DNA from: Octopus bimaculoides | Taxonomy: Eukaryota | Length of the DNA stretch: 40,600 bases | Direction of reading: 5' to 3' | NCBI RefSeq assembly: GCF_001194135.2 | Contig: NC_068986.1 | Location: 3,691,943-3,732,542 of the forward strand | Notes under the pieces: model-generated | Database searches by the model: none | Told to the model about the DNA's origin: nothing | What the model saw: only the letters and a program-made list of their open reading frames with translations | In this document: positions 752 to 40,600 of the stretch, in pieces | Numbering within the stretch: the first letter of the stretch is position 1 | Layout of the letters: each line of letters opens with the position of its first letter | Position numbers and translations under genes: made by a program

Positions 752-2175
752 AGAAGAAGCTGACAGGGCTCCATGAAAGGGTAGTACAACAGCTAGATGA
801 GTGCTTGCAGGAAGGCACAGTACCTAGCTGGAAGACAAAGGGAAAGACATTGTTATGTGTCAAGGATCCTGAAAAGGGAAATGTTGTATCCAACTTTAGA
901 CCAATAACATACCTTCCGCTAATGTGGAAACTAATGTCAAGCGCTTTGGCCGGTGAACTGTACAGATACATGGAAAAAAGTGGCCTGCTATCCATTGAAC
1001 AGAAAAGGGTACCGAAAAAGGAGTCGGGGAACGAAGGATCAACTCTCAATTGATAATTATATTGTCAAGAACTGAAAGAAAAGACATACAAACCTGAGCA
1101 TGGCATGAATAATAAGAACAATGGATAATAAGAACAATGGAAATGTATGGAATAGCAGAGAATATAAGAAGCCTTACAGAATTGACATCAGGGAAGCAAG
1201 TACTAGGAGAGGTGTGTCCCTAATGATATTTGTCTTGGGAATGATCCCCTTGTGTGAAATACCACAGAAAACAAAGTTGGGATATGATCTGGGAAGAGGT
1301 AAGGGGAAATTAAACCACTTGTTATTCATGGACGATCTAAAGCTTTTCACAAAAACTGAGGCAGAACTGGATAGCCTAGTCCAGTCTGTGCGGATTTTCT
1401 TCAATGATATTAAGATGGAGTTTGGACACTCAAAATGTGCTACGATGGTGATAAGACGAGGAAAGCTTGCCAGGACAGAAGGCATATGACTGCTAAATGA
1501 TGAAATGATAAAAGCAATTCAACCTCAATCCCATTATAAGTATCTGGGAATACTTGAGATAGAAGGACTCAAGCACCACGGCATGAAGGAAAACACAAAA
1601 AGAGAGTACCTGCGGCGAGTGAGAATAATATTGACTTCAAAGCTGAATCTCAGAAACATAACGTCGACAATAAATACGCGCAAGGTCGCTGTAGTTCGGT
1701 ATAGCGCTGGAATTCTGAAGTGAAAAGAGGAGGAGCTAAAAGAGATGGGCAGGAAGTCATGAAAGCTTCTAACGATGCATGGAGCCCATCATCTGTGTGC
1801 AGACACTGGTCGCCTATACATGAAGAGAGCAACTAGAGGAATGGGACTGATAAGTGTGGAAGACTGCGTGCGTGAACTCGAGAGCTTAATGAGATACCTA
1901 GCCCAAAGTAAAGAAACCTTGCAGGTGACAGTTAGGAACGATGGATTATTGAGAGCAGAAAAAAAGGGAAAGCAAAAGATGTACAAAAAAGACATGAAGA
2001 AGAATTACACAATCAATTTCATGTAGCCACAGCAGAAGTTGGTGGAAAAATTGGTGGAATTGGTGCACATCTTAAGGAAAGTATTATCTGTCTGCGGTCC
2101 TTGTTGTGACTTGACAGATGACTAAAGACTCCAGTGCATTTTTACCTACACCGTGTTACGAAGGAATAATAATAA
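752..2175 (+). mobile_element. 5'-truncated, internally deleted R4/Dong-like LINE (copy B), RT pseudogene
   Basis: RT motifs KTLLCVKDPEKGNVVSNFRPITYLPLMWKL, LNHLLFMDDLKLF, YKYLGI and RLYMKRATRGMGLISVEDC lie across several frames. C-terminal HILRKVL is at ~2070 and an (AAT)3 tail at 2165-2173. Has stops, frameshifts and a 16-bp tandem duplication near 1110-1140. Confidence 0.88.
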
Positions 2176-2362: not shown

Positions 2363-2530
2363 GATGTATGTATGTATGTATGTATGTATGTATGTATATA
2401 TAATATATATATACATGCATATATATATATGTATATATATATACATACATATATACATACACACACACACATATNNNNNNNNNNGTATATATATATACAT
2501 ACATATATACATACACACACACACATATGT

Positions 2531-6315: not shown

Positions 6316-6700
<385 letters not shown>

Positions 6701-7779
6701 AAATGCTTTAAATAGACAACTTGGAAAATTCCCGTGAGTAAACGTCTTGACCTGTGTTCCACGAACAAACATTAAAAATACCAAATTTTCCCTTTATATC
6801 AATGCATCGGAAACACTTCAGCCTAATTCAGATGAAATACGGAAAATATGTCTACTAAGAAATATCCATCACAACTAAATTCTCTAAATTAGATTGAAAA
6901 TCTCAATTTATTCACTGAAAACCGGACGCTCAGAAGAAAATGAAACAAACACTCAGCTGACTGAGACAAGTATCTTCTTCAGGGAATCAGCCAATCAAAA
7001 AGTTGGACGACCGTCAGACAAAGAGCAAGTTCTCAAAACCTTTGAAAACGAATGACCTACGCAGGAAATCAACTAACCAGAGTACGAGATTTCTACTTGT
7101 CAAAAAACAAGTAATCAAAACAGCCAATAAATAAATGACGTGATCAGGAAGTCAACCGACGAGAGCGCTGGACCAGAACATTCGAAATACAAGTGTCATA
7201 TTCAGGCAGTCAGCCAACCAAAATATTTGACTACAGATGGACAAAAACCAAAACTTGATGCTATAGCCTAAAAAACATATATATATACAAAAGAATTTTA
7301 ACTTAAAACAGTTCAAGTTCTTACCAGTAAAAACAGCAACGAAGCACCCTCTTTCATGCACAACGATAGAAACTGTTAAAAGAAAAATTTTGTATACTTT
7401 CTTTTCTTTATTTTTTAGTCTATCTCTATCAAGACTTCATCGAATCTAATTGTTAAGATAACTCGTTGCTTCTGAACTTTAATTCGTATGATTATTATGA
7501 AATCCATTGAACATTTGAACTTCGATTATTTTCTGTTTATGTCAATTTTTTTATTATTGGAATTTGATTTTTTAAGCAACCTCTCCTTCAATCTCTCCTA
7601 AACCTTTTCTACTTACCAGTATAAAACAGAACATTGATGAAACCTGTATGGTATTTTAATAAATTTGTTAAAATATTTAAAACTACTATTCGTTTTACAG
7701 CTCAGTTGCCTTTTCAAACTGCCAAACCAACTCTTATACATACATACATACATACATATAACATACATTTCAAATATAT

Positions 7780-8092
7780 CTGCAAGGGCGACAGAAAATC
7801 TCTTAATATGAACATTGAAGGACATTTAATGGTTACTCTCGCTGGAAACGGAAGCTAAACAATGGGTTGAAATGATGAGAGCAGAGGCTGGAGATCCTCT
7901 GATAAAAGGAAGCAAATTTGACAAAAACACACCACTTGCACAGGACTGGTGTACAGTGGTTTCAAGTGCAGTCACTGTAATAAGAACTACCGCACATATA
8001 TGAGTCTTTACTGTCACAGCAGATGCTGATCTGTCGACAAGGCAAAAACAATACTTTCTAAGTGCCACAAAAACAATACTTTCTAAGTGCCA
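7780..8092 (+). mobile_element. 3' fragment of RTE-clade LINE
   Basis: YSRWKRKLNNGLK followed by FKCSHCNKNYRTYMSLYCHSRC*, matching the C-terminal C-x2-C...H...C motif of RTE/BovB-type ORFs. Ends in a 25-bp tandem duplication caaaaacaatactttctaagtgcca. Confidence 0.7.
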
Positions 8093-17696: not shown

Positions 17697-18033
17697 AGGC
17701 AGCNNNNNNNNNNNNNNNNNNNNNNNNNNNNNNNNNNNNNNNNNNNNNNNNNNNNNNNNNNNNNNNNNTTTGCCTTCATCCTTTCCGAGTCGACAAAATA
17801 AGTTCTAGCTTACCCCCTCCCTCGAAATTGCTGGCACAAGGCCAGCAATTTCGAGGGAGTGAGGTAAGTCGATTACATCGACCCCAATACTCAGCTGGAA
17901 CTTATTTTATCGACCCGGAAAGGATGAAAGGCAAAGTCGACCTCGGCAGCATTTGAACTAAGAACGTAAAGACGGACGAAATACCGCTAAGCTTTCGGCC
18001 CGGCGTGCAAACGATTCTACCAGATCACCGCCT
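17697..18033. mobile_element. Tail-to-tail fused inverted pair of SINE family D copies
   Basis: A plus copy (gap inside) runs to 17835 and a minus copy spans 17841-18033. The junction forms a perfect 19-bp stem with a 5-nt loop. Confidence 0.85.
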
Positions 18034-19562: not shown

Positions 19563-20011
19563 ACACACACACACACACACANNNNNNNNNNNNNNNNNNN
19601 NNNNNNNNNNNNNNNNNNNNNNNNNNNNNNNNNNNNNNNNNNNNNNNNNNNNNNNNNNNNNNNNNNNNNNNNNNNNNNNNNNNNNNNNNNNNNNNNNNNN
19701 NNNNNNNNNNNNNNNNNNNNNNNNNNNNNNNNNNNNNNNNNNNNNNNNNNNNNNNNNNNNNNNNNNNNNNNNNNNNNNNNNNNNNNNNNNNNNNNNNNNN
19801 NNNNNNNNNNNNNNNNNNNNNNNNNNNNNNNNNNNNNNNNNNNNNNNNNNNNNNNNNNNNNNNNNNNNNNNNNNNNNNNNNNNNNNNNNNNNNNNNNNNN
19901 NNNNNNNNNNNNNNNNNNNNNNNNNNNNNNNNNNNNNNNNNNNNNNNNNNNNNNNNNNNNNNNNNNNNNNNNNNNNNNNNNNNNNNNNNNNNNNNNNNNN
20001 NNNNNNNNNNN

Positions 20012-26276: not shown

Positions 26277-26484
26277 AACTAGCTAATTTGCTTGTTGCAA
26301 GACCAGTGACTGGTTGTCACTTATTTTCTATATATTGCGAGGTGGAGTGAACTACTACGATCTCTAGCGGACAGGTTTTTGTTGTTTTTTGAAGAATACT
26401 AAGCGGAATTTTTTGTGCGAAGAAAAGATGTTACGCAGAAGCTACTGAAGGTCAAGATACGATAGACCCACGTGTGCTGAAACC

Positions 26485-27513
26485 GAAGGAATTAGTGAGT
26501 GTAGATAGACAGACTGGTTTTGCTAAAATGAAGCTAAACACAGGTGAAACTGTCATCTATTCTGGCAGGGTAGACGAAATACACCGCAGTGGAGTAGCTT
26601 TTATGATGTCCAAAGATGCTGAATCGACACTCATGGAACGAAAACCAGTGAGTGAGAGAATCAGCACAGCCAGATTTTATTCTAAATTCATTAAACTAAC
26701 AGTTAGCGACGTGTATGCACCTACAACGGATGCAGAAGATGAGGTGAAAGACACCTTCTATGAACAGCTGCAAACTGTCGTTGAGAATGTGCACAAACTT
26801 GATATGGTTATAGTAACTGGAGATATGAATGCCAAGGCTGGAGCAAATAATAAGGGGAATGAGAGAATAATGGGTAAACATGGAACAGGAATCATCAATA
26901 GTAATGGCGAAAGGTTTATAGAATTCTGTGGGATAAATGACCTCGTCATTACTGGAACTGTATTCCCACACAAGGACATTCACAAAAAACACCTGGACCT
27001 CTCCAGATAAAAGAACAACAAAACAACAAATCAAATTGATTACACACTCGTCAAATGTAAATACCGCTCATCAATAAAAGACATCCAGGTCATGAGAGGC
27101 ACTGATGTTGCAAGTGATCATCAGCTTGTAAGGTCACAAGTGAAGTTGAAACTTCGAAAACACCTGTACAAGACAAAGACAGACCCAAGAACAAAATATG
27201 ACACTTGCAAACTACAAAATCAAATAATTAAAAGGAAGTTCATTATGGAATTGAAGAATAAATTTGCTTTGCTTGAGGCGATTCCAGAAGATATTGACAT
27301 AGAAAGGAAATGGAAAAATTTCGATAAAGCATTCAACCAGATAACCGAAGAAGTACACGGTGTAAAGAAAGAGAATAAAAAACCGTGGATAAGACCAGGC
27401 ACTTGGGAAAAGGTTGAAGAGAGAAAACACCTCAAAATTAAAATTGAAAATGCCTGGTCCATCAGAATTAAACAACAGATGCAAATGGAATACAAAGCAA
27501 AAGACAGAGGTTA
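26485..27513 (+). mobile_element. RTE-clade LINE fragment: APE endonuclease and linker
   Basis: GISECR, YSG...SGVAFMM, VSERISTARF, VYAPT, TGDMNAKAG, NSNGERF..FC, TNQIDY and ASDHQLV; one frameshift near 26995. Confidence 0.92.
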
Positions 27514-28760
27514 GCAACCTGGATGCTTTGTAGAGAGTGTGTTATCAAAGAAGCTGAATCATCTTTATACCATTCTGGCCATTATACCATTGTTAAATGA
27601 TCTTATTACACTGATCATCTTTTGGGGACACCCAAACGTATGCAGGACTTTGCAAAGGCGTCACGGTTTATCGTATCAAAAACTTCTATTAAATCAATAA
27701 AGATCGTACACAGGTCCTGGTTATGCTCTCTAGCCTTCTCCTCGACCTGACGAGAAGCGAATATCATATCAATTGTCCCTCGACCACGGCAGAAACTGTA
27801 TTGTGATTCAGGATACATAGTGTCCATCAGGTGAAGAATGATCCTGTTGAGCAAGGATTTGGTGAGTATTTTACAGTTAATTGTTGCGGTAACAGTACTT
27901 TTTGCCTTTTCGTATGTATAGACGAACTAATGAGACACCTTTGTAATTCTGTGAGACAACACTCTGGTTTCATATGTTCTGGTAAAGCTTGGTGAGTTTT
28001 TCAACCAGGTGGGTTCCACCATGCTTGTAGACTTCACTTGATGTGCCGTCAGAATCTGGTGACTTCCTGGAGAACAAGATATCGTGTTGTGAGAAGAAAT
28101 TAACTTTGAACTTTGTTGAAGTGCTCTGCCCAGTGCGAGAGAAAGTCATTCTTGTTCGCAAGCAGCTGAGTGTCATCTGATGTTAGAACTGGTGCGGTGT
28201 ATCTGGTCTTGGGGGTCTTAGATTGCCTTGAGTCCCTCATAGAAGATTTCTCAGTAGCTGTTTGTAGTTCAGATTCTTTGTTCTCCCCATGAATCCAGTC
28301 TGGTCTGCAGGGTGTACTGTGCCTGATGGCATGTAACCTTAGTTCCTGCTGATGACTTGGCGAGATGCGTTCCTTATCAGCAGAGTGTATTATTTCAATC
28401 ACTTCTGCAACAGTCTGAACTGGTACTCATCAAACCAGTTCTGATATTTGCGCTTTGCAAAACCGAGGATATCAGAGGCTGTCTCATATAAAAGTTATTT
28501 AAAATTATTCCAGTACTGTCGTCTGACGTGCTGATCAGAACTTTGTCCATGGTCAATCCCAGTTCTATACATTTTCCCTTTAACTTCAGTGCAGATAAGT
28601 AGATCCTGTTTAGAGTTGACGCTGTGTCCAGGTTCTTTGGTTGTAAAGTTTAAGGACATTGTGACCCTCACGTCCGTGTTCTGACTAGGAAACTATTGTC
28701 TCTGAGTGATCTGGTGGTAATGTAAACGTCCTTTTGGTCCCTGCTACAGAGCAATCACAT
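27514..28760 (-). mobile_element. Decayed RTE/BovB-like LINE fragment (linker plus N-terminal RT)
   Basis: HWAEHFN, GGTHLVEKLTKLYQNI, PESQYSFCRGRGTIDMIFASRQVEEKAREHNQDL..FIDL.EVFDTINR, GCPQKMISVIRSF. Confidence 0.88.
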
Positions 28761-31763: not shown

Positions 31764-32101
31764 CACATACACATACACTGAACTGCTACTAAACGTTTCT
31801 GGTTACCAGCGTTTCTTCAGACCCGAGGCCCTCTGCTGCTCTATAACTTAGAGTGTGCTTCTTTTTCGGATTTATGATTCACCNNNNNNNNNNNNNNNNN
31901 NNNNNNNNNNNNNNNNNNNNNNNNNNNNNNNNNNNNNNNNNNNNNNNNNNNNNNNNNNNNNNNNNNNNNNNNNNNNNNNNNNNNNNNNNNNNNNNNNNNN
32001 NNNNNNNNNNNNNNNNNNNNNNNNNNNNNNNNNNNNNNNNNNNNNNNNNNNNNNNNNNNNNNNNNNNNNNNNNNNNNNNNNNNNNNNNNNNNNNNNNNNN
32101 N

Positions 32102-34789: not shown

Positions 34790-35389
34790 GCACACGATTT
34801 CGCACGCACAAATTTACCATGTATATGTCTATATGCTTGTATGAGTAAAGGGTGCATATTACTGCAATAATTACGAAATCATGATATACCGTTTAGTCTG
34901 TTTTTAGGAGGTTAGCTTTGAGAGATGCATTCCCTCGCGTTCGGTAAATATGTGTTTATTATGGTAGTTCAACTTTAGATTCCCTCTTAGTGTGAGGCAT
35001 TTATGTACAGTAATGCCCTTATATATNNNNNNNNNNNNNNNNNNNNNNNNNNNNNNNNNNNNNNNNNNNNNNNNNNNNNNNNNNNNNNNNNNNNNNNNNN
35101 NNNNNNNNNNNNNNNNNNNTATATATATATATATATATATATGTAGACCTGTTGCTTGTTTACATTCAGAGGATTTACGGTAGCGAACTTGCTATGAAAT
35201 GTTTTCTGTCTATCACTATAGTTTTTCATTCAACCTTTTCTTACAGCGACCTTCTCATTTTACATTCTATTTGAAAGATTTACGGTAGCGAATTCATTAG
35301 GAATCCCCTTTCTTTTCAGTATCGTTGTTTTTCCTTTTATCGTTTTTTCGCAGCGCCCGGCTAGATTTATACCTTTTGTTTTTCTCTTT

Positions 35390-35960
35390 TCTTCATATCT
35401 TCGTTACCAGCTCTCCCTGTCTCTTTCATACCTACCTCTTCCTCTCTCCTCTTTCCTTCCCCTTATATATCTCACTCCCTCTCCTGCTTCACCCTCCCTC
35501 CCTTTATCTTTCTTTACACCTGCCTCTCTCCCTCGATCTTTCATATCTCCCTCTTTTCCCCATTTCTCTCCCTTATTCTGTCTCTCCCTCCCTTTCATAT
35601 CTTACTGCTTTTCTGACTTCTCTTCCCTTCCTTTGTCTCTCTCTACATCTACCTCTCCCCCTGTCACCTCACCCTCTCCCTCATATATTTCTCATTTTCC
35701 CTCCTCTCCTCACTCCGTCTCCCCGTTTCCCTCACATCCTTCATTCTCTCCTCTCTCTCACACACTGTCTCCCTTTCTCTTCTATCCTCTCCCCCCTCTG
35801 TCTCGCTATCACCCCACATCCCCTTTCTCTTTCTTCACATCACCCTCTCTCTTTCCTTCATATCTCCCTCTCTCTTTCCCTGTCCCTCCCATTGTCTTTC
35901 TTCTTCTCTACCTCCCTCTGTCTCTCTCACTTCCTCTCTATCTTTTCCTCCCCCTCTGGG
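35390..35960 (+). repeat. ~570-nt polypyrimidine (C/T) low-complexity tract
   Basis: Seen directly; TTCATATCT recurs four times. Confidence 0.9.
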
Positions 35961-35974
35961 CTCAGAAAACAAAG

Positions 35975-36963
35975 ATGGCACCTAAGTGGGAGAGCAAAGA
36001 ATTGAATCTGCTGTTTCGAGTATGGGCAGTTGCTAGCGGCGACCCGCCAAATATCATCACTACTGCACTGAAGAACAATGGCTTCTGTAGAACCATTGGT
36101 CAGATAGAGCAGAAGAAGAATGAATTCATCCGATCCTATGCCCTTATCAGACCACACACTGACACTCTTGATATCATCACGGAAAGCTACTGTGGCAAGG
36201 CTTATAAGGATAGGGAAAACAAAACGAAAAAACAGAAGTCTCTTTGATCCAGTGGTTCCTAAAAAAAAATGAATCCCCCACACCTGTGAACGACCAGGTT
36301 GATAAGGATAGGGAAGCCAAGGAAGCAGCAACCAGAAGCCCCTCTGTGACAGTGGTTCTACAAAGGAACGGAGTCCTCACCCCATTGGACAACCAGAGGT
36401 ATACAAATGCTACCATAAGAAAAGGAAGGAAAGAATACGAGCACAAACATGAAGAAGTAAGGGGAGAAAAAGTAAAAGAAAAAATGAAATAACTAACACC
36501 GAAACCCCAAACCACCAAACAGAAAGCTCAAACATGGAGCTCCAATGAAATCCGAAACCCTAGAGGAGAAAAGAAATTTGGATTGCACTCAAGGACCTGC
36601 AAATTTTATCTGCAAGGCAAATGTTGGCATGGGGATGACAGTATAAACTGCCGGTTTGCTAACCCGAGATCCTGCCAAAACTATAGGGGCCCTAAGGAGA
36701 AATACTTCTCTGAGGAAAGGCACCAATCGTCCCCAATGAAAAAGTATCCAAAAGTAGGTCACTCTTCAGATATTATGCGTAACGCAGCAGCTGAGCAAGA
36801 GTCATTTTTGTGCATGGCGCAAAAGATTGTGCAGCAGCTGACATGGCTACATCAAGCGCAAACAAGGAACCTTGCCCACCACTGCGCAAGTCCACCACAA
36901 TCAACAGACACAGGATGGTTTCCCCTAACACCTGCACAGTCGTCATGCCAATATTTTTACTAA
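35975..36963 (+). pseudogene. LINE ORF1: Myb/SANT(trihelix)-like N-terminus plus CCCH-type zinc finger
   Basis: MAPKWESKELNLLFRVW...LKNNGFCRTIGQIEQKKNEFIRSY, then TCKFYLQGKCWHGDDSINCRFANP. Broken by a frameshift at ~36245-36270 and a stop at 36490. Confidence 0.7.
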
Positions 36964-39906
36964 ATATTGGGGGCCCTGTTGCATCATAACAACAAAAGCA
37001 AAATTTTTTTCCTGAGAGACCTTACTGTATGCAATCAAGCCCTATGCATAGCACTCGCGGAAACTCAGCTGAGCACTGATATAGAGGATGCAGAAGTACA
37101 CGTACTAAAATATACCATACTGCGAACAAACACAAGGGAAAGGAGCCATGGTGGAGTTGCTGTATACATATGTGATGACCTCACACTCACAATCTTACTT
37201 CACATTCAAATTCAGTGTGTGACACTCTAATTGTATACATGAGACAACGCAATATAGTCATATGCAATACATATCGCCCACCAGATGCTCCAAACCACAT
37301 AGGCAAGTTTGAAGATTACCTCACAAAAATGAAAGAAATTCTCATGAAACTTCCCCAATGTCAAATGGCCCGAAGGTCTCATACTCTCAGGAATGGCTCA
37401 TTGCAAACAAGCACAGGTGGAGTCCCTGCTCAATCTGACCAATGCCCTATTCATGGAGGAAATTGTACTCAGACCAACTAGGGTGGATAACATTTTGGAT
37501 CTCTGCTTCACTAACAATACAGACATCGTTCATGATGTGAAAGTGACGCCGACATTAGTTTCGGATCACAGCATACTAGATCTGTCTATGTATGGGCTAA
37601 AAGTAGCCAGAGACATACAGCCTAAAGGAAGCACCCAAAATCTCTCCAATCTGAACTTCCACAAAGAAGACTGGAAATCGATCCAAAAAGAGATCCTCAA
37701 ACAGAACTGGCTGAAATGTCTCTCCACACCAGACGTCGGCATGAAACTAGAATATTTCATGTCTGTTATGCAAACCAGAAATATGTCCCAGAGCACAAAG
37801 CCAACACAAACAGGAACAAGATTCCAAGGGAGAGGAAGATCCTCATGAGACGACGGACGAAGGTTGCAAATCGCCTCAACCAACATTCCAAATGTAGCGA
37901 AAGGTCCCGCCTAAAAACAACACTGATGGAGATTGAAAAAAACCCGTAACAATCCTATGTCAGGGAGAGAGCAGACAAAAAAGCCTGGGTTATAAAAAAC
38001 ATTAAGTCAGACCCAAAGGCCTTCTTTCATTATACGAAAGAAATCGCCTCAGTACGCTGCAAGATAAAATCCCTCTTCCAAAAGGATGGCTCCCTCACAG
38101 ATAGTCCAACCAGGATCAGTGAGATACTGAATGACCAGTTCAAAAGTGTTTTTACCACCCCGTTGGAACACAGAGAAGTGAACGAATCAGTGGATTTTTT
38201 GCTACCTCACCTATAACCAGCGAGGCAGTTACGATAGATTACATCGACATTAGCGAAGAAAATATACCACTAGCCACAGATGAGGTGGACGCAAACTCAA
38301 CTGCTGGTCCTAATGGTTTCCCAAGCAATCCTCTTCAAATCGTGTAAGCGTGCCCTGGCGAAACCTCTACAGATTCTCTTCCAGAGCTTTCTTTCAAATG
38401 GCTGGCTGCCAAGCAAACTGAAGGAGGGAATAATATGCCCAATCCATAAAGGGAGAAGCGGAGCAGATGCCAAAAACTATTGGCCTATCTCTCTGACTTC
38501 ACATATCAGCAAAATCATGGAATGGATAGTCAGAGGGAAACTAATCGCATTTCTTGAAGAAAAGAACTTGCTTAATGATACCCAGCATGGCTTTCTACCA
38601 GGTAAGAGATGCCTGACATAGCTCTTACAACACTATGACTGGGTGTTGAGGCAGTTACCCAACAACTGAAGTGTGGACGTAATATACCTTGAATTTGCAA
38701 AAGCTTTTGATAAAGTGGATCATAGTATGATATACCACAAACTGCGTGATCTCAGCATAGCTGGAAAACTTGGAGAGTGGTTACATGACTTTATGAAAGA
38801 TAAAAGTCAGGCAGGAGTGACCAATGGAGCCACCTCAATGAAAACACAAATAGTGAGTGGTGTTCCACAGGGCGCTGTCTTGGGACCACTGCTTTTCATA
38901 GTGGCCCTTTCAGATATACCCTCAACTGTCTAGATAGTCACCCTTGCTAGCTACGCAGACGATATTACAGTATCTCAGAAAATACAGAACCCCAGCAATG
39001 TTACACACCTGCAGCAGGAGTTGGAATCAGTTTACAGATGGGCTGAGGATAATAATATGCAGTTTAATTGTGGAAAAATTGTCCAAGCCCTGTGCTACCA
39101 GCGTCCAAAGCTGAATATGAAACTTACAGGGTACACATGACCACAGGGGATTACAATTCCAGAGCCTAAATCAGTTAGGGATCTGGACATCGACAGGAGT
39201 GATGATACCTGTTTCCAAGTGCAGATTACCAGGATGGCGACAAGGTGCAGACGACTGGCTGGCTGGATCCTGAGTACGTTCAGAATCAGAGAGAAGGAAA
39301 CCATAATGGTCCTCTGGAGGACATTCGTCCTCAACCGCCTGGATTACTGCTCCCGGCTATGGTCACCCAACAGTGTAAAATTACCAGTTGAACTTGAAGC
39401 AATCCAGCGAAGTTTCACAACAGCTCAGCCACTAGGAAAGGCTGAAACAGCTAAGACTCTATTCCCTGGAACGAAGGCGGGAGAGGTAAGCAGTAATATA
39501 CATCTGGAAGACCCTGGAAGGAATTGTGCCAAATTTTGGCGTTGAAAGCTACACTAATGCCAAAACGGGTCTACAGTGTACAGTGTCAAAGATCCCAGCA
39601 ATACCATCGCGCTTCAGGACCAATTACTGCAACAGCCTGAGTTTCAGGGGCCTGCAGCTTTTTAATATTCTCCCAAAGAGCCTGAGGGAACTACACAAAG
39701 TGGATGTAGGTGTTTTCAAATCAAAACTGGACCTCTTCCTGTTGACAGTTCCAGCTGAATCTACCTCACGGCAAGAGGTGCAAATGAAGGTAGCGGCATC
39801 AGACTCCATTCTTCACATATTCCACATATTAGAGGAGGCTCTCAGTAATATAAGTGTTGCAAAACGGCAGTGCCCCAGCATAGCCACAGCTCTGAGCTGA
39901 AACTAT

Positions 39907-39908
<2 letters not shown>
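35975..39908 (+). mobile_element. Near-full-length, disrupted CR1/L2-group LINE (ORF1 + APE-RT ORF2)
   Basis: ORF1 spans 35975-36963. ORF2 starts at ATG 36945 with LLNIGG, LAETQL, SHGGVAVYI, YRPPD, NILDLCFTN, NYWPISLTSHISKIME, QHGF, AKAFDKVDH, SGVPQGAVLGPLLF, YADD and LDYCSRLWSP. Multiple stops and frameshifts. The 3' end runs into (TA)n. Confidence 0.92.
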
Positions 39909-39909
<1 letters not shown>

Positions 39910-39954
<45 letters not shown>

Positions 39955-39992
39955 NNNNNNNNNNNNNNNNNNNNNNNNNNNNNNNNNNNNNN

Positions 39993-40209: not shown

Positions 40210-40600
40210 ATGTCTTCTCTATGGAAGACATTTGTCCTGAGCCGCCTAGACTATTGCTCTCAGTTGTGGTCACCACACAGTGTCAAACGGACAGCAGAAC
40301 TCGAGACAATTCAGCGGCACTATACAAAAAAAATCGCCACAGTCCAGCAGATGAACTACAGGGAGCGACTGCAGGCACTAGGTCTCTACTCCCTGGAACG
40401 CAGGCGGGAGAGATATGTAATAATATACATATGGAAAATACTGGAAGGACTGGTGCCGAACTTTGGCATCAAGTACTACAGGAATGCCCGCACGGGTCGC
40501 CACTGCATGGTGCCAAAGGTGCCGTCCACTGCATCTCACATAAGAACAAGATACTGCAGCAGCCTCGGTTTCAGAGGACCTCGGCTCTTCAATGCCCTGC
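40210..40600 (+). mobile_element. 5'-truncated second CR1/L2-group LINE copy, frame intact to window end
   Basis: About 130 uninterrupted codons: [39 protein letters not shown]...NYRERLQALGLYSLERRRERY...GFRGPRLFNAL. Homologous to 39310-39670. Absent from the ORF track because it has no stop in the window. Confidence 0.92.

What the first reader, a model, noticed from the sequence alone, without database searches (positions are those of the whole stretch)
35975..36963. LINE ORF1 carrying a Myb/SANT (trihelix)-like domain plus a CCCH zinc finger
Seen: the ORF upstream of the APE-RT has W-x3-E-x3-L-x3-W, then G-F-x-R-T-x2-Q-x3-K-x3-F-x3-Y. Further on it has C-x7-C-x8-C-x3-N, where AAC is one change from His CAC. 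The ATG is in strong context (AAGATGG), and the ORF1 stop (36961-63) overlaps the ORF2 ATG (36945) by 19 nt in the -1 frame. Established: the first pattern is the register of the Myb_DNA-bind_4/trihelix family typical of PIF/Harbinger accessory proteins and MSANTD factors. Commonly catalogued LINE ORF1 domains are RRM, CCHC knuckles, PHD, SGNH esterase and coiled coil. Inference: this LINE lineage captured a DNA-binding domain in place of the usual module, possibly for target choice or self-regulation. I do not know of a description but cannot exclude one.
Basis: partly seen in the sequence, partly recalled or inferred. Interest (0 to 1): 0.78.

Follow-up and report, generated by a model that had tools for sequence, protein, structure and literature searches.

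The report
Octopus LINE with Myb-like ORF1
This stretch is a dead copy of an octopus jumping gene (a LINE) whose first protein carries a Myb/SANT-like three-helix domain and a CCCH zinc finger, a combination I did not find in published surveys of LINE proteins.

Summary
However, 35975-36963 is not one ORF: this copy has a frameshift near 36236-36270 and an in-frame TAA at 36490-36492, and its ORF2 is broken too. It is a decayed LINE copy spanning about 35439-39954.

Relatives recover the intact design. A majority consensus of three copies gives an open ORF1 of about 319 aa. It has an N-terminal three-helix domain, a charged linker, one C-x7-C-x8-C-x3-H finger (the window's Asn is a mutated His), and a long C-terminal helix. 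ORF2 (APE + RT) overlaps it in the -1 frame.

The order N-domain, CCCH, APE, RT holds in 7 of 8 loci examined, from Octopus vulgaris, O. sinensis and this window, across at least three subfamilies.

The N-domain is the most constrained part of ORF1 (dN/dS 0.09). Its only recurrent Pfam match is Myb_DNA-bind_4. That match is below threshold for this family (17-18 bits against a cut-off of 27), but one relative passes at 29.3 bits. An AlphaFold model (pLDDT 86) superposes best on the GT-1 trihelix and SANT domains.

A survey of 448 Jockey-superfamily ORF1s lists neither domain. DNA binding and target choice remain inference. Verdict: real, a new variant of a known kind, of moderate interest.

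The parts
35439..35974 (+). 5' UTR of the LINE: a strongly C+T-rich stretch of about 540 nt with internal 54-nt and 23-nt tandem units. The 5' boundary is approximate.
   Evidence: Homology to the O. vulgaris copy L001 begins at window 35439. The same C+T-rich leader precedes ORF1 in L001, L002 and the diverged L003.
35975..36202 (+). ORF1 N-terminal Myb/SANT-like (trihelix-type) three-helix domain plus its conserved RPH..LD extension (codons 1-76). The ATG is in the context AAGATGG.
   Evidence: alignment A2; Pfam Myb_DNA-bind_4; AF2 and Foldseek; dN/dS 0.086.
36203..36597 (+). Charged, variable K/E-rich linker. It is broken in this copy by a 5-nt deletion plus a 1-nt insertion near 36236-36270, a stop in the ATG frame at 36245-36247, and an in-frame TAA at 36490-36492.
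   Evidence: three-copy DNA alignment; A3; dN/dS 0.40.
36598..36663 (+). Single CCCH-type zinc finger, C-x7-C-x8-C-x3-(H). The fourth ligand is mutated to Asn here (AAC at 36661-36663).
   Evidence: Relatives have His. Pfam zf-CCCH, zf-CCCH_4 and zf-CCCH_PARP12 all match below threshold. dN/dS is 0.12.
36763..36870 (+). Long amphipathic C-terminal helix of ORF1 (SSDIMRNAAAEQESFLCMAQKIVQQLTWLHQAQTRN). It is a candidate multimerisation helix.
   Evidence: AF2 gives a helix with pLDDT 91-96. It is conserved in P0014 and P0001. dN/dS is 0.20.
36961..36963 (+). ORF1 stop codon (TAA).
36915..39848 (+). ORF2 in the -1 frame relative to ORF1, overlapping it by 49 nt. The APE endonuclease lies at about 36967-37537 and the reverse transcriptase at about 38195-39043. 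Several frameshifts and stops break it in this copy.
   Evidence: (Pfam Exo_endo_phos_2, RVT_1).
39849..39954 (+). 3' UTR ending in ...GAGCTGAAACTATAAC, followed by a (TA)n tail from 39910 that runs into an assembly gap at 39955-39992.
   Evidence: The tail is (TA)n in L001 but A-rich in L002.

Best explanation
Window 35439-39954 is a decayed copy of an octopod LINE of the CR1/L2 group of the Jockey superfamily.

In the active ancestors, ORF1 encoded a protein of about 320 aa with four parts:
1. An N-terminal Myb/SANT-like three-helix domain of the trihelix (Myb_DNA-bind_4) type. Its third helix is basic and continues into a conserved RPH..LD extension.
2. A disordered, charged linker.
3. One CCCH-type zinc finger (C-x7-C-x8-C-x3-H).
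4. A long amphipathic helix followed by a Pro/Gln-rich tail.
ORF2 (APE + RT) starts 49 nt before the ORF1 stop, in the -1 frame.

Shown here: the architecture, its linkage to the LINE in several loci, species and subfamilies, and purifying selection that is strongest on the N-domain.

Inferred: the CCCH finger and the basic linker bind the element's RNA, in the role that CCHC knuckles or RRMs play in other ORF1 proteins. The C-terminal helix multimerises the protein. The Myb-like domain gives the ribonucleoprotein a contact with double-stranded DNA or chromatin, at the target site or at the element's own DNA. The precedent is R2, whose N-terminal zinc finger and Myb domain position the enzyme on its target.
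For: Element and decay:
- Broken frames in the window.
- Full-length alignment at about 80% nt identity to two O. vulgaris loci.
- The majority consensus of three copies gives an open ORF1 of about 319 aa with an overlapping ORF2.
- ORF2 carries APE and RT.

Linkage:
- The order N-domain, CCCH/C-term, APE, RT holds in 7 of 8 loci.
- These include a subfamily with only about 32% ORF1 identity (L003) and an O. sinensis copy (L007).
- P0014 and P0025 keep N-domain plus CCCH at 28-33% identity to the consensus ORF1.

Selection (window against the O. vulgaris subfamily):
- N-domain dN/dS 0.086 (pS 0.66, pN 0.12).
- CCCH part 0.12.
- C-terminal helix 0.20.
- Linker 0.40.

Myb assignment:
- Myb_DNA-bind_4 is the only Pfam hit for the family consensus.
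- 9 of 22 relatives hit it at E <= 1, and no other family recurs.
- P0023 scores 29.3 bits against a cut-off of 27. It matches a leave-one-out family HMM at 43 bits, including the RPHIKSLD extension.
- The AF2 model has pLDDT 86 and helices at 7-20, 25-35 and 42-74.
- The best superpositions are the GT-1 trihelix 2jmw (prob 0.75, TM 0.57, rmsd 2.9), the DMAP1 SANT domain 3hm5 (TM 0.60, rmsd 2.0) and the PHR1 MYB domain 6j5b.
- The most conserved residues are R40, K48, K49 and Y56, at the start of and within helix 3.

CCCH finger: the ligands are conserved in diverged members, and four CCCH Pfam families give sub-threshold hits.

Precedent: the R2 N-terminal zinc finger and Myb domain bind target DNA (PMC10499050).
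Against: - The window's own 90 aa has no Pfam hit at E <= 10.
- The family consensus is 9 bits below Pfam's cut-off.
- No Foldseek match has E <= 0.001, and many unrelated helical proteins are listed.
- Sequence and profile searches of the PDB found nothing relevant.
- The third canonical Trp of Myb repeats is replaced by Phe/Tyr.
- The CCCH spacing (x8 between Cys2 and Cys3) is not canonical, and all CCCH hits are below threshold.
- AF2 gave low confidence for the finger, from a 5-sequence alignment.
- No copy examined is intact.
- Nothing here tests nucleic-acid binding.
- No target-site preference could be seen with this few copies.
Confidence: 0.72

Rival explanations
1. The N-terminal domain is a helical module unrelated to Myb/SANT. 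It would serve protein-protein contacts or ORF1p assembly, and the Myb-like register would be convergent.
For: - The family stays below Pfam's threshold at 17-18 bits.
- Foldseek E-values are all above 1.
- PDB sequence searches found nothing.
- Helix 3 is unusually long, spanning residues 42-74.
Against: - Myb_DNA-bind_4 is the only family that recurs, in 9 of 22 members.
- The match covers all three helices, profile positions 2-67 of 89.
- One clear relative passes the curated cut-off.
- The closest superpositions by rmsd and TM-score are trihelix, SANT and Myb domains.
Confidence: 0.15
2. The Myb-like domain is genuine but binds the element's own RNA, or acts in regulation of the element itself (for example on its C+T-rich 5' leader), rather than the genomic target. 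ORF1p would then be a purely cis-acting RNA packaging protein.
For: - ORF1 proteins of other LINEs are RNA-binding chaperones (established knowledge; Khazina and Weichenrieder types as summarised in PMC4120745).
- A conserved, very asymmetric C+T-rich 5' UTR accompanies this ORF1 in all subfamilies seen.
- No insertion-site preference was detected.
Against: - Characterised Myb/SANT/trihelix domains bind dsDNA or histone tails (established knowledge). R2's Myb domain binds target DNA.
- The protein already has a CCCH finger and a basic linker that could bind RNA.
Confidence: 0.25
3. Chance juxtaposition: a fragment of a host gene or of a PIF/Harbinger Myb-like gene happens to lie upstream of a LINE at this locus.
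For: The window is full of transposon fragments.
Against: - The same order of parts appears in 7 of 8 loci on different chromosomes and in another species.
- Homology between copies runs uninterrupted from the 5' UTR through ORF1 into ORF2.
- Purifying selection acts on the domain across LINE subfamilies.
- No transposase or terminal inverted repeats are nearby.
Confidence: 0.01

Closest known systems
CR1/L2-lineage LINEs of the Jockey superfamily with modular ORF1s (Metcalfe and Casane 2014, PMC4120745)
   Same: - Two ORFs, with APE + RT in ORF2 (Pfam Exo_endo_phos_2 and RVT_1).
- A short 3' UTR with a simple-repeat or A-rich tail.
- An ORF1 built from shuffled modules, which that paper describes as the rule in the CR1 and L2 lineages.
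   Different: The modules catalogued there are PHD, RRM, CCHC, Tnp22 (coiled coil-RRM-CTD), esterase, and leucine zipper/zinc finger. Neither a Myb/SANT-like domain nor a CCCH finger is listed. Pfam finds none of the catalogued modules in this ORF1.
R2 elements: N-terminal C2H2 zinc finger plus Myb domain (PMC10499050)
   Same: A non-LTR retrotransposon protein that pairs a zinc finger with a three-helix Myb domain at its N-terminus. In R2 these bind target DNA upstream of the cleavage site and are required for nicking.
   Different: - R2 has a single ORF with a restriction-like endonuclease, and its Myb domain is fused to the RT protein.
- Here the domain sits in a separate ORF1 of an APE-type LINE.
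- The finger is CCCH (typically RNA-binding), not C2H2.
- The Myb-like domain is of the trihelix/Myb_DNA-bind_4 type.
- No site specificity is evident.
Myb-like accessory proteins of PIF/Harbinger DNA transposons, and MSANTD or plant trihelix (GT) factors (Pfam PF13837)
   Same: The sequence register of the N-domain is the same, and PF13837 is the only Pfam family matched. The fold is closest to the GT-1 trihelix domain.
   Different: - The context is a LINE, not a DDE transposon or a host gene.
- Scores are below Pfam's cut-off for all but one relative.
- No close non-LINE relative was found among 1.84 billion representative proteins, so no donor can be named.
Myb-like domain in ORF2 of telomere-specific R1-clade LINEs (TRAS/SART; recalled from the literature, not verified here)
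   Same: An APE-type LINE that carries a Myb-like module thought to help target recognition.
   Different: That module lies in ORF2 between the endonuclease and the RT, and those elements are strictly site-specific. This one lies in ORF1 of a dispersed element.

Membership tests
Pfam PF13837 Myb_DNA-bind_4 (Myb/SANT-like, trihelix type) | Profile score at or above the curated gathering cut-off (27 bits) | tested here: not met
   - Window 90 aa: no hit at E <= 10.
- Three-copy consensus: 17.4 bits.
- HMM consensus of 22 relatives: 18.3 bits.
- Only relative P0023 passes, at 29.3 bits.
PF13837 is nevertheless the only family hit, and 9 of 22 members match it at E <= 1.
Pfam PF13837 Myb_DNA-bind_4 (Myb/SANT-like, trihelix type) | Three-helix bundle with a basic third (recognition) helix | tested here: met
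   The AF2 model has pLDDT 86 and helices at 7-20, 25-35 and 42-74. The nearly invariant residues R40, K48 and K49 lie at the start of and within helix 3.
Pfam PF13837 Myb_DNA-bind_4 (Myb/SANT-like, trihelix type) | Statistically significant structural match to a solved trihelix, SANT or Myb domain | tested here: inconclusive
   The best superpositions are 2jmw GT-1 (prob 0.75, TM 0.57, rmsd 2.9), 3hm5 SANT (TM 0.60, rmsd 2.0) and 6j5b MYB. All Foldseek E-values are above 1, as expected for an 80-residue helical query.
Pfam PF13837 Myb_DNA-bind_4 (Myb/SANT-like, trihelix type) | Regularly spaced aromatic core residues (W ... W ... W/F/Y) | tested here: met
   W5 and W17 are conserved. The third position is F51/Y55 rather than Trp, and Y56 is invariant in alignment A2 numbering.
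Pfam PF13837 Myb_DNA-bind_4 (Myb/SANT-like, trihelix type) | Binds double-stranded DNA | not testable with these tools
   This needs purified protein and gel-shift or SELEX assays.
CCCH zinc finger (Pfam PF00642, PF18044) | Three Cys and one His with spacing C-x7-8-C-x4-5-C-x3-H | tested here: not met
   The window has C-x7-C-x8-C-x3-N, so the fourth ligand is lost. Relatives have C-x7-C-x8-C-x3-H: the ligands are present, but the middle spacing is x8 rather than x4-5.
CCCH zinc finger (Pfam PF00642, PF18044) | Profile score at or above the gathering cut-off | tested here: not met
   zf-CCCH scores 17.6 against 20.5 bits, zf-CCCH_4 scores 16.7 against 24.6, and zf-CCCH_PARP12 scores 16.1 against 27. 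Several CCCH families converge on the same 25 residues.
CCCH zinc finger (Pfam PF00642, PF18044) | Metal ligands conserved among diverged relatives | tested here: met
   C49 is invariant. The other ligands are each kept in 4 of the 5 sequences in A4 (by inspection of the sequences). W41, H42, G43, R50, F51 and P54 are invariant.
APE-type LINE, Jockey superfamily (CR1/L2 group) | ORF2 with an N-terminal AP endonuclease and a reverse transcriptase, preceded by a separate ORF1 | tested here: met
   Pfam finds Exo_endo_phos, Exo_endo_phos_2 and RVT_1. The order of parts is shown and the ORF1/ORF2 overlap.
APE-type LINE, Jockey superfamily (CR1/L2 group) | Placement in a named clade by RT phylogeny (RTclass1 or Repbase references) | not tested
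   No reference RT set was available. The CR1/L2 assignment rests on my reading of RT and C-terminal motifs (FRPGRSC, YADD, SLERRRERY) and on the Pfam Exo_endo_phos_2 match.
Catalogued LINE ORF1 types I-IV (RRM+CCHC; coiled coil-RRM-CTD; PHD; esterase) | Presence of an RRM, CCHC knuckle, Transposase_22, PHD or SGNH esterase module | tested here: not met
   Pfam finds none of them at E <= 10 on the consensus ORF1. AF2 of the C-terminal half shows one long helix and no RRM-like sheet. By that scheme this ORF1 falls in the unclassified type V.
PIF/Harbinger Myb-like accessory gene | Encoded next to a DDE (PIF/Harbinger) transposase between terminal inverted repeats | tested here: not met
   In seven loci the domain is followed by CCCH, APE and RT of a LINE. 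No transposase was seen.

The most novel reading that the evidence does not exclude
ORF1p of this octopod LINE lineage is a sequence-specific DNA-binding protein. Its Myb-like domain would steer the ribonucleoprotein to particular genomic sequences or chromatin states. That would be target selection by ORF1 rather than by the ORF2 endonuclease, a division of labour not described for APE-type LINEs.
Probability: 0.15. Interest if true: 0.7.

Novelty: new variant of a known kind. Interest (0 to 1): 0.45.

Why it matters
ORF1 proteins are the least understood part of LINE biology. The catalogued modules (RRM, CCHC, coiled coil-CTD, PHD, esterase) all point to RNA handling, membrane or chromatin reading.

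A LINE lineage that has kept a Myb/SANT-like domain plus a CCCH finger under strong purifying selection adds a new module pair to that catalogue. It also raises a testable possibility: that an ORF1 protein contacts DNA directly, as the N-terminus of R2 does.

There is a practical point for annotation. The octopus proteins found here, named 'hypothetical' or 'uncharacterized', are fragments of this ORF1. Its Myb-like domain could be mistaken for a host transcription-factor domain.

Tried and rejected
1. Pfam on the window's own N-terminal 90 aa gave no hit. The assignment needed the family consensus and relatives.
2. Sequence and profile searches of the PDB with the N-domain, the A2 profile and P0023 gave only chance-level hits.
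3. Foldseek against the PDB gave no significant E-value. I used it only for the ranking of close superpositions.
4. I considered that the element targets (TA)n microsatellites, with the Myb-like domain as the targeting module. The window and L001 have (TA)n at the 3' end and some upstream. However, L002 ends in an A-rich tail without (TA)n, the upstream (TA)n runs are 40-290 bp from the 5' ends, and (TA)n is very common in these loci. I rejected the idea as unsupported.
5. The 3' UTR does not fold better than shuffled sequence (z = -0.41).
6. AF2 of the CCCH/C-terminal half gave mean pLDDT 56. Only the long helix is trustworthy, and the finger itself was not modelled with confidence.
7. I could not make a profile-profile comparison with a genuine Myb_DNA-bind_4 alignment, because no such sequences could be obtained.
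8. I looked for an intact copy. All eight loci have frameshifts or stops. Only P0014, from an unnamed 1.8-kb ENA contig, is an apparently complete ORF1.
9. Literature searches for a prior description found none. Repbase and Dfam were not available.

Full report
**1. What is in the window**

- The ATG at 35975 (context AAGATGG) opens a frame reading MAPKWESKELNLLFRVWAVASGDPPNIITTALKNNGFCRTIGQIEQKKNEFIRSY.... This contains W5-x3-E-x3-L-x3-W17 and G36-F-x-R-T-x2-Q-x3-K-x3-F-x3-Y55.
- CKFYLQGKCWHGDDSINCRFAN (C-x7-C-x8-C-x3-N) lies at 36598-36663.
- The TAA is at 36961-36963.
- An ATG lies at 36945 in the -1 frame.

However, 35975-36963 is not one ORF.
- The ATG frame ends at a stop at 36245-36247 after 90 codons.
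- The zinc finger is in another frame.
- That frame has a TAA at 36490-36492.
- The downstream APE-RT region is also split by many stops and frameshifts.

So the window holds a dead copy.

**2. Relatives and the intact design**

The conceptual ORF1 found only Octopus vulgaris proteins. Their loci L001 and L002 align with the window at about 80% nt identity over the whole element:
- 35905-39954.
- Back to 35439, through a C+T-rich leader.

Each copy has different lesions. The majority consensus of the three copies is an open ORF1 of about 319 aa.
- At the window's Asn codon (AAC) the relatives read CAC.
- The window's frame break comes from a 5-nt deletion plus a 1-nt insertion in an A-run near 36236-36270.
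- The ORF2 ATG conserved in all copies is at 36915, in the same frame as 36945, giving a 49-nt overlap. The ATG at 36945 is private to this copy.
- ORF2 carries the AP endonuclease and the reverse transcriptase (Pfam).

**3. Linkage**

I ran tblastn with the four parts against all loci fetched. The order N-domain, CCCH/C-term, APE, RT holds in seven of eight:
- The window.
- L001, L002, L003, L004 and L006 from O. vulgaris, on different chromosomes.
- L007 from O. sinensis.
- The eighth locus, L005, is an internally deleted copy.

L003 belongs to a diverged subfamily: ORF1 about 32% identical, APE about 48-59%, RT about 70-75%. It has the same leader and the same architecture. P0014 (371 aa, an unnamed ENA contig) is an apparently complete, diverged ORF1 with all four parts. 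None of the eight genomic copies is intact.

**4. Selection**

Between the window copy and the O. vulgaris subfamily, most differences in the N-domain are synonymous: 31.2 synonymous against 21.8 non-synonymous differences, pS 0.66, pN 0.12.

| Part of ORF1 | dN/dS |
|---|---|
| N-domain | 0.086 |
| CCCH segment | 0.12 |
| C-terminal helix | 0.20 |
| Linker | 0.40 |

Neutral decay after insertion pushes these ratios towards 1, so the constraint during the active life of the lineage was at least this strong. The N-domain is the most constrained part of ORF1. That excludes a chance neighbour or a passenger.

**5. Is the N-domain Myb/SANT-like?**

- The window's own 90 aa has no Pfam hit at E <= 10.
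- The three-copy consensus hits only Myb_DNA-bind_4 (E=0.0058, 17.4 bits, profile positions 2-66 of 89).
- An exhaustive HMMER search of 1.84 billion representatives with residues 1-80 found 21 proteins at E <= 1e-3. Every one I looked up that carries a name is from O. vulgaris or O. sinensis.
- In the alignment of 22 domains (A2), 9 hit Myb_DNA-bind_4 at E <= 1 and no other family recurs.
- The HMM consensus again hits only that family, at 18.3 bits.
- One relative, P0023, passes Pfam's curated cut-off (29.3 against 27 bits, E=1.2e-6). It matches a leave-one-out family HMM at 43 bits, including the family-specific RPHIKSLD extension.
- AlphaFold2 on A2 gives a confident three-helix model: pLDDT 86, helices at 7-20, 25-35 and 42-74.
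- Foldseek against the PDB gives no significant E-value. The hits that superpose well are the Arabidopsis GT-1 trihelix domain (2jmw: prob 0.75, TM 0.57, rmsd 2.9 A), the DMAP1 SANT domain (3hm5: TM 0.60, rmsd 2.0 A), a plant MYB domain (6j5b) and a homeodomain.
- The most conserved residues are R40, K48, K49 and Y56, at the start of and within helix 3, the recognition helix in this fold.

My reading is that this is a diverged member of the Myb/SANT-like trihelix group. The evidence is convergent but formally below threshold for this family.

**6. The rest of ORF1**

- Four CCCH Pfam families converge below threshold on the finger.
- Its ligands and the WHG and CRFAHP motifs are conserved in diverged members.
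- The middle spacing (x8) is not canonical.
- AF2 of the C-terminal half is poor overall (pLDDT 56). The exception is one long helix, window 36763-36870, at pLDDT 91-96. My inspection of its sequence finds a 3-4 hydrophobic spacing, which suggests a coiled coil.
- No RRM, CCHC, PHD, Transposase_22 or esterase module is detected.

**7. Mechanism**

Shown: a LINE lineage whose ORF1 has kept a Myb/SANT-like domain, a CCCH finger and a helix under purifying selection.

Inferred:
- The CCCH finger and the basic linker bind the LINE RNA.
- The helix multimerises the protein.
- The Myb-like domain contacts dsDNA or chromatin.

The closest mechanistic precedent is R2. Its N-terminal zinc finger and Myb domain bind DNA upstream of the nick site and are required for nicking (PMC10499050).

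With so few copies I could not detect any target preference. The idea of (TA)n targeting was dropped because L002 has an A-rich tail and the upstream (TA)n runs are not adjacent to the 5' ends. RNA binding or self-regulation on the conserved C+T-rich leader remain open.

**8. Comparison with what is known, and novelty**

The largest ORF1 survey of the Jockey superfamily covers 448 elements (PMC4120745). It lists PHD, RRM, CCHC, Tnp22, esterase and leucine zipper/zinc finger, and stresses domain shuffling in the CR1 and L2 lineages. Neither Myb nor CCCH appears. The octopus LINE study describes RTE and Dong elements, not this one. Full-text searches found no description. Repbase and Dfam could not be searched, and the clade was not placed by phylogeny.

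I rate this a new variant of a known kind: an ordinary APE-type LINE with an ORF1 module pair that I did not find catalogued. Interest is moderate. ORF1 modularity is expected, the copy here is dead, and function is untested. But an ORF1 with a probable DNA-binding domain is a clean, testable case.

Noticed in passing
window 35439-35974; also L001 7463-8000, L002 about 7470-7830, L003 about 6500-6960: The LINE's 5' leader is a 350-540-nt stretch made almost only of C and T on the sense strand, with internal 54-nt and 23-nt tandem units. It is kept in diverged subfamilies. It may be an unusual internal promoter or a binding platform.
   Followed up: partly
window 40219-40593 (+): Just beyond the (TA)n tail lies a fragment of a related LINE's ORF2 3' region. 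It is 68% identical to window 39312-39666 and 71% identical to L001 11285-11658. It looks like a second, 5'-truncated copy in tandem orientation that runs off the window end.
   Followed up: partly
L003 10961-12945: In O. vulgaris a second, 5'-truncated copy of the same LINE family (APE and RT) starts right after the first copy's tail and an assembly gap. This is the same head-to-tail arrangement as in the window.
   Followed up: no
window 26474-27514 (+): Two consecutive ORFs of 178 and 140 aa come from another LINE. The first has a weak endonuclease match (Exo_endo_phos_2, E=7e-4). It is unrelated to the element studied.
   Followed up: partly
window 1121-1489 (+): A 122-aa ORF has a reverse-transcriptase fragment (RVT_1, E=5e-6, just below the cut-off) from yet another retroelement.
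   Followed up: partly
window 2475-2484, 17704-17768, 19582-20011, 31884-32101, 35027-35119, 39955-39992: Runs of N (assembly gaps) mostly sit inside or next to dinucleotide or other short simple repeats such as (TA)n and (CA)n. The assembly broke at simple repeats, so the tail length of the LINE copy is unknown.
   Followed up: no
P0023 (unnamed 965-nt NCBI contig): The one relative that passes Pfam's Myb_DNA-bind_4 cut-off comes from an unidentified source. Its C-terminal third reads like a translated C+T-rich repeat. Its species, and whether it belongs to a LINE, are unknown. It could mark an intermediate between the octopod ORF1 domain and ordinary Myb_DNA-bind_4 proteins.
   Followed up: partly
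O. vulgaris and O. sinensis annotations (P0001-P0006, P0008, P0010, P0019, P0025, P0028, P0029): These proteins, annotated as 'hypothetical', '---NA---' or 'uncharacterized', match this LINE's ORF1. Those I aligned or traced to their loci are fragments or frameshifted read-throughs of it, i.e. transposon pseudogenes called as genes. P0028 and P0029 were not inspected individually.
   Followed up: partly
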